This document shows positions 494-49,356 of a stretch of 64,000 bases of DNA, in pieces. The position numbers were made by a program, and so were the translations under genes. The notes below the pieces were generated by a model. That model made no database searches. It was not told where the DNA came from and saw nothing but the letters and a program-made list of their open reading frames with translations. Positions within the stretch are counted from its first letter, which is position 1. The number at the start of each line of letters is the position of its first letter. The stretch is from Hypanus sabinus (lineage: Eukaryota), in NCBI RefSeq assembly GCF_030144855.1, contig NC_082707.1:116312001-116376000 (forward strand). Direction: 5' to 3'.

Positions 494-894
494 TTAATCC
501 CTTCCTCCTGAGGGTGCTTGTTTTTTAGTCAATTTGTAAATATTGTTGCTTCCGCTTGTGTGAATTAACTCGCTATTAAACTGTTCCGGCAGGAGTTCTT
601 GGTGAAAATTAGAGGCTCCCTCTCTAGCAAACATGTTAGAACAGATGTAAACTATAGTTCTCTCGTTGCAAAGATGTAAAAGTGTCTGCAAAAGTTGTGG
701 AAACTTGGTAGGGTTGTACACGATGTCCGATCCCAGAATAACATCAAAGTCAGACGGATAGTTGTTCAGATCAGTTCCCCAGACGAGAGCGCTGATTTTC
801 GAACGGTGCCTGGAACTGAGGGGGATGTTGGCAGAAACGTTGTATTCTATTTGCTTCAGGACGTCTCGCCTGTCCGTGAGAGTGACATCTCCGC
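494..894 (-). CDS. EEF1AKMT3: Paralog A coding exon 3
   Basis: Acceptor ttcttccaatag|GCGGAGAT. Encodes GDVTLTD...LVWG...[10 protein letters not shown]...IYKLTKK. Stop TAA at 494-496. Confidence 0.92.
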
Positions 895-3800
895 CTATTG
901 GAAGAACAAATGAAACAAGTTTTCTCTTTGGCTCAGGCCAGTACGATCTAGAGTAATAATTCGTGCCAGATGGAGTGAAATTAGTGCAGAATAACCTCAA
1001 ACTACAACCCCAGTCAGAAGTAGCTGGAGCAGATGTCGTAAAGAAGGTAGAAGGGGGTTGGCAAATTTATTTATTGTTTTAACATTTCACCGCATCAGTT
1101 TGTGCGAGGATAAAACGATACTTGAATGCAAAAAGATGTGTTAGGGTTACAGAGCATGTGCCGTGTAGGCGGACTGTAGGAAGCAAGCCCATTGCAAAGT
1201 AGATGCGAGGACAAGCATTAGCCTCATTGTACAGGAGATCCGTTCATTAACAGTTGTCACTGAGCCTGGGGTACGAGATTTCAAGCTTTTGTGACTCACG
1301 ACATACAAATCACCTCAGCCGCAGCTTTCTTGTTCCAAAACCATTGGCTGCAGTGAACGTTGCAGAGCGAATTCCAAGTGAATTGCGTAAAATCAGGTTC
1401 CATTTACAAACTCAGTTGTCTCAGGGAACAACAGACATTTTTGACTGTGTTCCTTAAATGTTAGGGGGTTAATTTGTTGCCCAAACACAGTTTAACGCCA
1501 CTTTATCGTGATTTTCCGCCAGTGGCGGATGATATACGGACACTCACTGATTCAGCCGATAGAACCGTTACTTCACAGCACCTAACCCGTGTATAGAGNN
1601 NNNNNNNNNNNNNNNNNNNNNNNNNNNNNNNNNNNNNNNNNNNNNNNNNNNNNNNNNNNNNNNNNNNNNNNNNNNNNNNNNNNNNNNNNNNNNNNNNNNN
1701 NNNNNNNNNNNNNNNNNNNNNNNNNNNNNNNNNNNNNNNNNNNNNNNNNNTTGGGCTTACAGCACAGGAACAAGAAATCTTGCCGCACATGATTTACGAA
1801 ATATTGTCTCGGTCACGGCTGGACTATCATGTCCAGTTCTGGGAGCACACGTTTTAAGGAGGATGTGAAGGCTTTGCAGAGACTGCGGAAGAAATCTGCA
1901 ATTTCAAGGACTTCCGTTAAATATACAAAATTTAGACGGCGATACTGCTCTCCTTGGCACAAATGATTTGGTAGATTTGGTATTTAGAATCATGAGGGCA
2001 CAGAAACTGATGCAGATACGGAGAGGTTAAGAACTATATGATGTAGAGCGGCGTGATTTATAAAAGAACCAAAATTTGCGCCAGAGCATTTTTAATATAG
2101 TGAGTGGTTCGGGTCTGGAATAGAATTCAATTGTAATCTTCAAAATGTGGGTGTCAGAAGATCAATTTACAGCGCAGCGGAGTTCTACCAGCTGGATTTG
2201 CTCTTACTTAGATCAGGCGGGATTGGGGGGGGGGGGGGGTGGGGGGTGGAGGCAAAGTGAACTGCACCGCTGTCTTCCATTCTGTAAGGACACAGTGTTT
2301 CTGTAATAACTGCACCGAAGTTTTACAAGTTGCTAATAACTTCACTCTGACCGAAACGGATAACGTAGTGTTGTTTTAAATTAAACCAGTGTTTTAGGAG
2401 AGTCCAATATACTATTCCTAAATCCAAAGGACACGTTCCATAAACATGGATGAAATAAAGATACCAGGGTCTGGTGACGTCTGAAGTTGAAGCATCAGTC
2501 TATGAGCAGCCTCTTATTCCCGCGTGAATTTAATCTCGTTCATTGAATCCTTTTAATTACATTACAGAATCTTTCTGTAATGGTTTTAGTCGCAAAGGTA
2601 ATAGGATTATTTGTGCCTAACAAATTCTACAGTGATCAGGTTGTCTCCTAACCTGTTACGGTCTGTCTACACATTGCATTTACCGTTGCACCAACTGCAC
2701 CACTATAGTTCCCATTGCCATGTCGACCTGGTTTAAACCCTCCCGACTAGCTCTAACAAACCAGTTCGCAAGGACATTGGTTCCTCTCTAGTTCAAGTGT
2801 AACACATCCCTTTGGTAGTGGTCATACTTCCAGAAGAGATCCCAATGATCCACAAAACTGATGTTGGGCCCTCTGCACGAATTCTTCAACCACATTTGGA
2901 TGGGTTAAAATAGTTTATTCCAGTAGGGCAAGTATCAGGAAGAAAGGTGATGAACATGGATCAGTACTTGGAGCTACAATGTTGTGGCTGGTAGAGAGTC
3001 ATAAGGGCAGGATTGATCAGAGAGAGTTTTAGCTCTGGAGAGTTATAAGGTACCCAGGAAGGAGCTAAAGGATGGGTTTAGGAAAGATAGAAGGAAGCAT
3101 GAGAAGGTCTTGGCGAGCAGGACGAGGGAAAAACCTAAAGCATTTTACACGTACGTGAAGAACAGAAGGATGACTAGAGTGAGGGTAGGACCATTCAGGG
3201 ATAACAGAGAAAACGTGCCTGGTGTCAGAAGAGGTAGATGAAGTCTCTAATGAATATTTTACTTCAGTATTCGCCTGACAGAGGAACCTTGAGGAATGCA
3301 GCAGAGTATAAGTTGCTAATGGGATGGAACATGTGGACGGTAAGAAAGATGATGTGCAGGAATTTTTGAAAAAAAAACATTGAGATAGATAGTCCCCAAG
3401 ACCTGACGGAATATATCCCACTTTGCAACGGGACGCAAGCGAAATACTTGCTGTGCCATTGGCAATGAGCTTTGTGTCCTCACTGGCCACGGAAGAAAAT
3501 TGAAGGGTGGCAAATGCCATGCCTTCAAAAAAAGATAATATGGATATCTGGAATTATTGACAAGTGAGTCTTACTTCAGTGGCGGGCAAACTATTGGAGA
3601 AAATTCTTAGAGACAGGATTTACGAGCACATAGAGAAGATAGTCTGATTTGGGACAGTCAGGATGGCTTTCGGATAGCTGCCGGGGGTGGGGTGGGGGGA
3701 GGTTAGATTGATTGTAGAGTACATTAAAAGATCGGTACAATATCATAGCCGTGCAATATCGCAGCCACTGTGCTAGACTGTTCCATATTATATGTTCCAG

Positions 3801-49200: not shown

Positions 49201-49356
49201 ATAATTTACCTGTCTTCTAACCTGGAATTTAGGGTTGGGGCTGTGAATTTTCATGAGGAGATCTTACCAAAGAAGTTCAACAGCGAAATAATTTACTCAA
49301 ACAATGGGAATTGCATTTACAAAATAACTAAAAAGCTCCCAATTGATGCGAACTAA
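40113..49356 (+). CDS. EEF1AKMT3: EEF1AKMT3/METTL21B-like, paralog C; join(40113..40238,41894..42005,48962..49356), 210 aa
   Basis: 126+112+395 nt in frame; ...[10 protein letters not shown]|[38 protein letters not shown]|GDVTLTD...GSDIVY. Confidence 0.92.
41105..41280. mobile_element. Penelope-derived palindromic mini-element
   Basis: cacacaaaatgc...caggtcaggcagcatc and gatgctgcctgac...attttctgtgtg inverted arms around ccgaaacgtcgac. Confidence 0.7.
41894..42005 (+). CDS. EEF1AKMT3: Paralog C coding exon 2
   Basis: cttttcctag|GGCATT...CTCCTTG|gtaggt. 112 nt. Confidence 0.93.
42180..42362 (+). mobile_element. tRNA-derived SINE with RTE-like 3' end
   Basis: B-box-like gagttcaaatcc; 3' ggtcgtcatgagtc. 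Confidence 0.55.
42382..43027 (-). repeat. 3' LTR of the Gypsy element
   Basis: Near-identical to 45630..46296 apart from a few substitutions and small indels. Confidence 0.95.
43468..43827 (-). pseudogene. Captured intronless myosin heavy chain (MYH16-like) rod fragment
   Basis: [20 protein letters not shown]...[63 protein letters not shown] matches recalled sarcomeric myosin rod motifs. Confidence 0.75.
43900..44330 (-). pseudogene. Degenerate, internally deleted Gypsy reverse transcriptase
   Basis: [42 protein letters not shown]. Confidence 0.9.
44488..45420 (-). pseudogene. Degenerate PNMA-like gag and aspartic protease
   Basis: [25 protein letters not shown] is PNMA/gag-like; [11 protein letters not shown] has catalytic DTG changed to GTG. 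Confidence 0.85.
45630..46296 (-). repeat. 5' LTR of the Gypsy element
   Basis: Adjacent to the PBS; ends at the CACT TSD. Confidence 0.95.
46690..46925 (-). mobile_element. V-SINE (HE1-type)
   Basis: gaggaaaccgcagcacccggaggaatcccactctgtcacggggagaa V-core; tRNA-like head near 46880-46925. Confidence 0.75.
47690..48232 (-). mobile_element. Degenerate CR1 3' fragment
   Basis: 3' tail (catagaacagt...aacaggcccttcggc) and C-terminal ORF2 remnants. Confidence 0.7.
48962..49356 (+). CDS. EEF1AKMT3: Paralog C coding exon 3
   Basis: tttttcttcag|GCGGTGAT. Encodes [10 protein letters not shown]; ends in TAA. Confidence 0.93.

What the first reader, a model, noticed from the sequence alone, without database searches (positions are those of the whole stretch)
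494..49356. Cluster of three intact, strongly diverged EEF1AKMT3/METTL21B paralogs
Seen: three complete genes with identical intron phases and 112-nt exon 2, no stops or frameshifts, and intact motif I and DxxY. A is on the minus strand; B and C are on plus. A and C resemble each other more than either resembles B. Known: human METTL21B is a single gene that methylates eEF1A Lys165. Inference: a lineage-specific expansion kept under selection, possibly a family of protein methyltransferases with new substrates.
Basis: partly seen in the sequence, partly recalled or inferred. Interest (0 to 1): 0.75.

Follow-up and report, generated by a model that had tools for sequence, protein, structure and literature searches.

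The report
Three old stingray EEF1AKMT3-like methyltransferase genes
The window (Atlantic stingray, Hypanus sabinus) holds three intact, selectively maintained copies of a protein-lysine methyltransferase gene related to human METTL21B; they are already annotated, and they belong to a much larger, very old gene array shared by sharks, rays and chimaeras that no paper in the searched library describes.

Summary
Genes A (-, 494-6046), B (+, 24346-28098) and C (+, 40113-49356) each have three GT-AG coding exons, a 112-nt exon 2, intron phases 0 and 1, no stops, and intact motif I and DxxY. Amino-acid identity is A-C 64%, A-B 52% and B-C 50%. The N gap (1599-1750) lies in intron 2 of gene A and touches no codon.

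A and C are identical to Hypanus sabinus RefSeq proteins. B matches a RefSeq model that starts 42 residues later.

All three are PF10294 enzymes, and their closest solved structure is human METTL21B. The model of A superposes on 4QPN with TM 0.93.

They are not a recent or stingray-specific expansion. In the tree, A and B each have orthologs in sharks and rays, and C at least in rays. Chimaera sequences fall inside the expanded clade. A slower-evolving "canonical" EEF1AKMT3 on another chromosome is its sister.

dN/dS against skate orthologs is 0.12, 0.16 and 0.25, which indicates purifying selection.

New substrates remain untested.

This is a new member of a known kind. It is moderately interesting as an apparently undescribed cartilaginous-fish methyltransferase family.

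The parts
5951..6046 (-). Gene A coding exon 1 (ATG to phase-0 donor GTAAGT), 96 nt
   Evidence: the spliced model is identical to RefSeq XP_059843565.1 (P0321)
3950..4061 (-). Gene A coding exon 2, 112 nt; holds motif I (ELGSGTG, about 3978-4004); phase-1 donor
494..894 (-). Gene A coding exon 3 with stop codon; holds post-I VTLTD and DxxY (GSDIVY, 716-733)
   Evidence: PF10294, E 1.9e-15
1599..1750 (.). Assembly gap (N run, 152 letters), inside intron 2 of gene A; not coding; left unfilled
24346..24516 (+). Gene B coding exon 1, 171 nt. The RefSeq model XP_059843579.1 starts at the internal Met43; orthologs use the upstream ATG
25377..25488 (+). Gene B coding exon 2, 112 nt; motif I at about 25434-25460
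27695..28098 (+). Gene B coding exon 3 with stop codon; DxxY at 27856-27873
   Evidence: PF10294, E 4.3e-15
40113..40238 (+). Gene C coding exon 1, 126 nt
   Evidence: the model is identical to RefSeq XP_059843592.1 (P0012)
41894..42005 (+). Gene C coding exon 2, 112 nt; motif I at about 41951-41977
48962..49356 (+). Gene C coding exon 3 with stop codon; DxxY at 49123-49140
   Evidence: PF10294, E 2.2e-14

Best explanation
A, B and C are three functional genes for S-adenosylmethionine-dependent, seven-beta-strand protein-lysine methyltransferases of the MTF16/METTL21 group. They arose by DNA-level tandem duplication from the EEF1AKMT3 (METTL21B) lineage, early in cartilaginous-fish evolution. 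Each has since been kept as a separate orthologous gene under purifying selection, inside a larger array. That array has at least five members on this stingray chromosome and at least 13-17 in some sharks. A slower-evolving canonical EEF1AKMT3 is seen in sharks on a different chromosome.

Shown here: gene structure, fold, catalytic motifs, orthology, age, selection and synteny with skates.

Inferred: the proteins bind AdoMet through motif I and post I, and they methylate a substrate lysine positioned by the DxxY motif. I commit to this reading: because a canonical gene probably still covers eEF1A Lys165, the long-retained paralogs most likely differ in substrate or site (about 55%). The alternative is the same site in different tissues, conditions or eEF1A isoforms (about 30%).
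For: - Intact models with conserved structure.
- PF10294 hits on every exon 2 and exon 3.
- Identity to RefSeq Hypanus sabinus proteins.
- Best PDB match is human METTL21B: A 183 bits, B-type 192, C 166, against METTL21A at 112-130.
- The AlphaFold model of A has pLDDT 94.9 and matches 4QPN with TM 0.93 and rmsd 1.6 A.
- E, L, two G of motif I, V-T-x-T-D of post I and other core residues are invariant across 79 family members. The D and Y of DxxY are at least 90% conserved and present in A, B and C.
- The careful ML tree gives the A orthologous group (sharks and rays) 100/94, B 100/100, C (rays) 100/98, the A+C subfamily 100/99, and the expansion as sister to canonical shark EEF1AKMT3 98/98.
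- The AU test rejects grouping canonical shark EEF1AKMT3 with bony-vertebrate KMT3 to the exclusion of the expansion (p 0.006).
- Canonical whale-shark EEF1AKMT3 scores 278 bits against human METTL21B.
- dN/dS against skate orthologs is A 0.12 (0.07-0.19), B 0.16 (0.09-0.24) and C 0.25 (0.16-0.38).
- Skate orthologs have the same exon sizes: B 171/112/404 and C 126/112/395.
- B and C are adjacent on the same strand in Leucoraja, as in the window.
- Amblyraja and Callorhinchus also have tandem arrays.
- Fully spliced transcript contigs of the skate C ortholog exist in two runs.
- The canonical gene shares the three-exon, 112-nt structure, so duplication was at the DNA level.
Against:
- No enzymatic or substrate evidence of any kind exists here.
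- The AU-tested group was named after the tree had been seen. Several outgroup and chimaera branches are long, so the exact timing of the first duplications is less secure than the shark-ray orthology.
- dS between stingray and skate is high (0.74-0.93). The Nei-Gojobori estimates are therefore rough, though clearly below 1.
- I could not establish whether rays keep a canonical EEF1AKMT3.
Confidence: 0.85

Rival explanations
1. The paralogs are redundant or tissue-partitioned eEF1A Lys165 methyltransferases. They have the same substrate and site as METTL21B and are retained for dosage, or for different tissues or eEF1A isoforms.
For: METTL21B is the closest characterised enzyme and is reported as highly specific for eEF1A K165 (PMC5416902). 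The catalytic core is conserved.
Against: - At least eight ancient orthologous groups have been kept for hundreds of millions of years, with group-specific fixed substitutions outside the AdoMet motifs.
- A separate canonical gene is far more like the human enzyme: 278 bits against 166-192.
- Other METTL21 members are reported to have diverged to different substrates: Hsp70 and VCP (table in PMC8662637).
Confidence: 0.3
2. This is a recent, stingray-lineage-specific expansion.
For: Three copies lie within 49 kb. The human gene is single-copy.
Against: - Synonymous sites between the paralogs are saturated (pS 0.76-0.80).
- Each gene has closer orthologs in Hemitrygon (96-97%, B and C only) and in Mobula, skates and sharks than its neighbours in the window.
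- The B-C order is conserved in little skate.
Confidence: 0.02
3. One or more copies are decaying or non-catalytic (pseudo-enzyme or unexpressed relic), or gene A is an assembly chimera across the N gap.
For: There is no stingray RNA evidence. The gap lies between exons 2 and 3 of A. C evolves about twice as fast as A.
Against: - All ORFs are intact, all motifs are kept, and dN/dS is 0.12-0.25.
- Exons 1, 2 and 3 of A all match A-group orthologs best.
- The A orthologs in Amblyraja, Pristis and Mobula have the same architecture.
- The skate C ortholog is transcribed and spliced.
Confidence: 0.05

Closest known systems
Human METTL21B / EEF1AKMT3 (PDB 4QPN), the eEF1A Lys165 methyltransferase (PMC5416902)
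   Same: Same Pfam family (PF10294). Same seven-beta-strand fold (TM 0.93 for A). It has motif I, post I and DxxY. It is the best PDB match for A, B-type and C.
   Different: - Only about 46% identical.
- Motif I is ELGSGTG rather than ELGAGTG. The motif is GSDIVY rather than GADIVY, and VWEPG/IWDAG replaces VWDAA.
- Not the one-to-one ortholog: a separate canonical shark gene is much closer to the human enzyme.
- Substrate unknown.
Canonical cartilaginous-fish EEF1AKMT3 (e.g. Rhincodon typus XP_048474771.1 = P0120; Heterodontus P0117)
   Same: Same three-coding-exon structure, with a 112-nt exon 2 and the same intron phases. It is the sister clade of the expansion.
   Different: It lies on a different chromosome or contig from the array (contig lengths). 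It evolves slowly (278 bits against human). It keeps ELGAGTG. It is about 47-52% identical to A, B and C.
RefSeq 'EEF1A lysine methyltransferase 3-like' models of Hypanus sabinus (XP_059843565.1, XP_059843579.1, XP_059843592.1)
   Same: A and C are identical to my models. B is identical over its 186 residues.
   Different: The RefSeq B model starts at Met43. The upstream 42 codons are conserved with skate (dN/dS 0.25), and the orthologs are 228 aa, so the longer form is more likely.
Human METTL21A (HSPA-KMT, 4LEC) and METTL21C/D
   Same: Same MTF16 fold and motifs.
   Different: They are more distant (112-130 bits and below) and serve as the outgroup in the tree.

Membership tests
MTF16 / Methyltransf_16 seven-beta-strand lysine methyltransferases | Match to Pfam PF10294 above the curated cut-off | tested here: met
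   Exon 3 of A, B and C scores 57.5, 56.3 and 54.0 bits (cut-off 21). The exon 2 pieces score 24.6-31.5 bits.
MTF16 / Methyltransf_16 seven-beta-strand lysine methyltransferases | Motif I (E-L-G-x-G-x-G) and post-I acidic residue | tested here: met
   All three have ELGSGTG and V-T-x-T-D. E, L, two G, V, T, T and D are invariant in 79 sequences.
MTF16 / Methyltransf_16 seven-beta-strand lysine methyltransferases | DXXY motif (D/E-X-X-Y/F), named as the MTF16 hallmark in PMC5416902 | tested here: met
   GSDIVY is present in A, B and C. The D and Y are conserved in at least 90% of 47 family members.
MTF16 / Methyltransf_16 seven-beta-strand lysine methyltransferases | Seven-beta-strand fold like solved METTL21 structures | tested here: met
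   The model of A has pLDDT 94.9. Against 4QPN it gives TM 0.93 and rmsd 1.6 A; against 4LEC, TM 0.89. B and C were not modelled.
MTF16 / Methyltransf_16 seven-beta-strand lysine methyltransferases | AdoMet-dependent lysine methylation activity | not testable with these tools
   Needs recombinant protein and a methylation assay.
EEF1AKMT3 / METTL21B orthologs (eEF1A Lys165 methyltransferase) | METTL21B is the closest human family member | tested here: met
   phmmer against PDB puts 4QPN first for C, A and B-type, 50-75 bits ahead of METTL21A. The tree places them within the KMT3 clade at 100/96.
EEF1AKMT3 / METTL21B orthologs (eEF1A Lys165 methyltransferase) | One-to-one orthology with the human gene | tested here: not met
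   A separate canonical gene exists in sharks (278 bits against human). A, B and C lie in a sister expansion of 71 of the 79 rows (98/98). They are co-orthologs or in-paralogs at best.
EEF1AKMT3 / METTL21B orthologs (eEF1A Lys165 methyltransferase) | Methylates eEF1A Lys165 | not testable with these tools
   Biochemical assay required.
EEF1AKMT3 / METTL21B orthologs (eEF1A Lys165 methyltransferase) | Conserved neighbourhood of the human gene (TSFM and METTL1 side; recalled from memory) | not tested
   The window holds no other host gene, only retroelement fragments. The 10-kb flanks of the canonical whale-shark gene held no other called gene.

The most novel reading that the evidence does not exclude
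Cartilaginous fishes carry an undescribed radiation of EEF1AKMT3-derived lysine methyltransferases. It would be more than 400 million years old if the chimaera placement holds. It comprises at least eight conserved orthologous groups in a tandem array, and A, B and C are three of them. Its members have acquired substrates or target lysines different from eEF1A Lys165. That would make it a natural library of new METTL21-type specificities.
Probability: 0.45. Interest if true: 0.65.

Novelty: new member of a known kind. Interest (0 to 1): 0.42.

Why it matters
The paper that characterised METTL21B describes it as a vertebrate-only enzyme with a scattered distribution, dedicated to one lysine of eEF1A (PMC5416902). 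I found no report of duplicates.

This window shows that cartilaginous fishes have kept many diverged copies for hundreds of millions of years, all under purifying selection. That offers a ready-made comparative set for asking how METTL21-type enzymes change substrate. It also raises the question of whether extra eEF1A or chaperone methylation exists in sharks and rays.

For the genome scan itself the finding is mostly confirmatory. The genes are real, and they are already annotated.

Tried and rejected
- There is no RNA evidence for the stingray genes and no splice-read test across the gap.
- **Ortholog DNA.** The look-up of encoding contigs returned no DNA for the Mobula orthologs because the files were too large. 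I therefore computed dN/dS against skates, where dS is high.
- **Canonical gene in rays.** Two canonical-like representatives (P0129, P0145) are not on record, so I could not tell whether rays keep a canonical EEF1AKMT3.
- **Literature.** Searches for METTL21B or EEF1AKMT3 together with shark, skate or elasmobranch terms found nothing relevant. Neither the whale-shark genome paper nor the sex-chromosome preprint mentions the family. The METTL evolution paper sampled no cartilaginous fish.
- **RNA families.** Rfam found nothing in the window.
- **dN/dS between A, B and C themselves.** This is uninformative because synonymous sites are saturated.
- **Full-length B.** The spliced 228-aa B protein has no single reference, so I used the 96%-identical Hemitrygon ortholog P0324 for the PDB search.
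- **Rejected readings.** I rejected a recent stingray-only expansion, an assembly duplicate and pseudogenes. The reasons are given under the rival explanations.
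Full report
**What is in the sequence**

The window has one N run, at 1599-1750. A six-frame motif scan found exactly three motif-I sites ([LIVM]2-E-[LIV]-G-[AS]-G-x-G) and three DxxY sites. tblastx among the three regions showed three homologous exon sets.

Reading the exon borders and assembling the pieces gives three complete genes:
- A, minus strand: exons 5951-6046, 3950-4061, 494-894; 202 aa.
- B, plus strand: exons 24346-24516, 25377-25488, 27695-28098; 228 aa.
- C, plus strand: exons 40113-40238, 41894-42005, 48962-49356; 210 aa.

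Every intron is GT..AG. Exon 1 lengths are multiples of three, so intron 1 is phase 0. Exon 2 is 112 nt in all three, so intron 2 is phase 1. There are no internal stops.

Identity is A-C 64%, A-B 52% and B-C 50%.

tblastn with 48 family proteins found these nine exons and nothing else in the 64 kb.

**The assembly gap**

The gap lies in intron 2 of gene A (895-3949), so no reading frame depends on it.

Exon 1 and exon 3 match the Mobula A ortholog best (97% and 90%). Exon 2 matches the Narcine A ortholog best (90%). Both sides of the gap therefore belong to the same orthologous gene.

The RefSeq protein XP_059843565.1 equals my model spliced across the gap. The Amblyraja A ortholog has the same layout, 132/112/398 nt.

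The direct test would have been RNA reads joining exon 2 to exon 3. 

**Identity of the genome and annotation status**

C is 100% identical over 210 aa to 'EEF1A lysine methyltransferase 3-like [Hypanus sabinus]'. The window is therefore Atlantic stingray.

Cluster look-ups and direct comparison show the following:
- A equals XP_059843565.1.
- C equals XP_059843592.1.
- B contains XP_059843579.1, whose 186 aa start at Met43 of my model.

The upstream 42 codons of B are conserved with little skate (dN/dS 0.25). Orthologs in Mobula, Hemitrygon and Leucoraja are 228 aa. The longer form is therefore more likely.

Two further family members lie on the same 212-Mb chromosome: XP_059843606.1 and XP_059846049.1.

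**What kind of protein**

Each exon 3 and each exon 2 hits Pfam PF10294 (Methyltransf_16, lysine methyltransferase) above the cut-off.

Against PDB sequences, human METTL21B (4QPN) comes first for all three types:

| Query | METTL21B | METTL21A |
|---|---|---|
| C | 166 bits | 112 bits |
| A | 183 bits | 130 bits |
| B-type, the 96%-identical Hemitrygon ortholog | 192 bits | 116 bits |

An AlphaFold model of A, built with a 47-sequence family alignment, has mean pLDDT 94.9. It superposes on 4QPN with TM 0.93, rmsd 1.6 A and 46% identity. METTL21A, 21C and 21D follow in that order.

The hallmark motifs named for this family in PMC5416902 are motif 1, post 1 and DXXY.
- A, B and C all have ELGSGTG and V-T-x-T-D.
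- They all have GSDIVY.
- Core residues of motif I and post I are invariant across 79 family members.
- The D and Y of DXXY are at least 90% conserved across 47 members.

**How old and how large the family is**

Two exon-3 searches and one profile search returned only cartilaginous-fish proteins at the top. There were 264 proteins at E <= 1e-10, and the best 120 are all named, or fall with, 'EEF1A lysine methyltransferase 3-like' from sharks, rays and skates. These include at least 17 distinct 90%-identity clusters in Heptranchias perlo and 13 in Heterodontus francisci, mostly on one chromosome each.

An exhaustive HMMER search with the whale-shark protein named plain 'EEF1AKMT3' supplied outgroups. 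Cluster look-ups then named them: sturgeon and paddlefish, bird and teleost KMT3, bird and coral METTL21A, and three Callorhinchus proteins.

The careful ML tree has 79 rows and uses LG+C20+F+G4. Rooted on METTL21A, it gives bird, then teleost, then sturgeon KMT3, then a cartilaginous-fish clade (99/94). Within that clade, canonical shark EEF1AKMT3 (Rhincodon, Heterodontus) is sister to a 71-row expansion (98/98). Inside the expansion:
- A sits in a group with Mobula, Amblyraja, Pristis and Narcine plus the sharks Heterodontus, Rhincodon and Carcharodon (100/94).
- B sits in a group with Hemitrygon, Mobula, Pristis and Leucoraja plus the sharks Heterodontus, Carcharodon and Heptranchias (100/100).
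- C sits with Hemitrygon, Narcine and Leucoraja (100/98). Its shark relatives are unresolved.
- A and C share a subfamily (100/99).
- Callorhinchus sequences fall inside the expansion, though on long branches.

An AU test rejects the alternative in which canonical shark and bony-vertebrate KMT3 form a clade that excludes the expansion (p 0.006). The caveat is that the group was named after the tree had been seen.

The canonical whale-shark protein is far closer to the human enzyme (278 bits) than A, B or C are.

The canonical gene and a Callorhinchus array gene also have three coding exons, a 112-nt exon 2 and the same phases. The shared structure is therefore ancestral, and the copies arose by DNA duplication rather than retroposition.

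**Synteny**

- In Leucoraja erinacea the B and C orthologs lie about 11 kb apart on the same strand, as in the window.
- In Amblyraja the A ortholog is flanked by two other family genes within 28 kb.
- In Callorhinchus three family genes lie within 23 kb.

**Selection**

I extracted skate coding sequences exactly and computed Nei-Gojobori estimates with codon bootstraps.

| Comparison | dN | dS | dN/dS (95% bootstrap) |
|---|---|---|---|
| A vs Amblyraja | 0.094 | 0.80 | 0.12 (0.07-0.19) |
| B vs Leucoraja | 0.117 | 0.74 | 0.16 (0.09-0.24) |
| C vs Leucoraja | 0.233 | 0.93 | 0.25 (0.16-0.38) |

All three are under purifying selection, and C evolves fastest. Between A, B and C synonymous sites are saturated (pS 0.76-0.80), which fits an ancient split.

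**Expression**

No stingray data could be obtained. Indirectly, two Logan contigs from runs SRR24105878 and SRR24105879 carry the complete, intron-less 633-nt ORF of the skate C ortholog. The genomic gene spans 4.6 kb. That ortholog is therefore transcribed and spliced.

**Interpretation**

These are real, functional-looking, selectively maintained protein-lysine methyltransferase genes. They are in-paralogs of EEF1AKMT3, not its one-to-one ortholog.

Group-specific fixed substitutions lie outside the AdoMet motifs. Examples are the N-terminal strand region (canonical I-x-Q) and the segment corresponding to human SKMRKEH. The canonical gene is retained, at least in sharks. This pattern favours diverged substrates or sites over simple redundancy, but that is inference only.

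**Literature**

No paper in the searched library reports the expansion.
- PMC5416902 describes METTL21B as vertebrate-limited with a scattered distribution and specific for eEF1A K165.
- The METTL evolution paper PMC8662637 has no cartilaginous fish.
- The whale-shark genome paper does not mention the family.

**Verdict**

The genes are already annotated automatically. As members of an apparently undescribed, ancient cartilaginous-fish family of METTL21B-like enzymes they are of moderate interest.

The rest of the window holds only LINE reverse-transcriptase fragments, an LTR element in intron 2 of C and a minisatellite.

Noticed in passing
window 24346-24471: The RefSeq model of gene B (XP_059843579.1, 186 aa) starts at the internal Met43. 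The 42 upstream codons are open, conserved with skate (dN/dS 0.25) and present in 228-aa orthologs, so the annotated start is probably too far downstream.
   Followed up: partly
window 42382-46296 (ORFs 43615-44478 and 44488-45627, minus strand): An LTR-retroelement remnant lies inside intron 2 of gene C, with weak RVT_1 and PNMA/gag-like Pfam hits. It accounts for much of that intron's 6956 nt; the same intron is 3055 nt plus the gap in A and 2206 nt in B.
   Followed up: partly
window 8164-9410 (-), 21442-23164 (+), 29413-30074 (-), 32861-33628 (+), 37432-37908 (-), 3022-3638 (-): Several decayed LINE-type reverse-transcriptase fragments (RVT_1 hits; stops in frame) fill the spacers between the three genes and intron 2 of gene A. 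No other host gene was seen in the window.
   Followed up: partly
window 56188-57248: A minisatellite of 38 copies of a 28-bp unit (92% matches) creates several long spurious ORFs on both strands.
   Followed up: no
P0161 (Callorhinchus milii XP_042194136.1) in the tree: The chimaera protein that NCBI names plain 'EEF1AKMT3' does not group with the canonical shark EEF1AKMT3. It sits on a long branch inside the expanded clade. It shares a 24-Mb scaffold with a three-gene tandem array.
   Followed up: partly
L007 (Amblyraja radiata CM021374.1, 13038051-13065915): In the thorny skate the A ortholog is flanked by two family genes of other orthologous groups (P0041-type and P0019-type). Neither has a counterpart in the window, so array content differs between skates and stingrays.
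   Followed up: no
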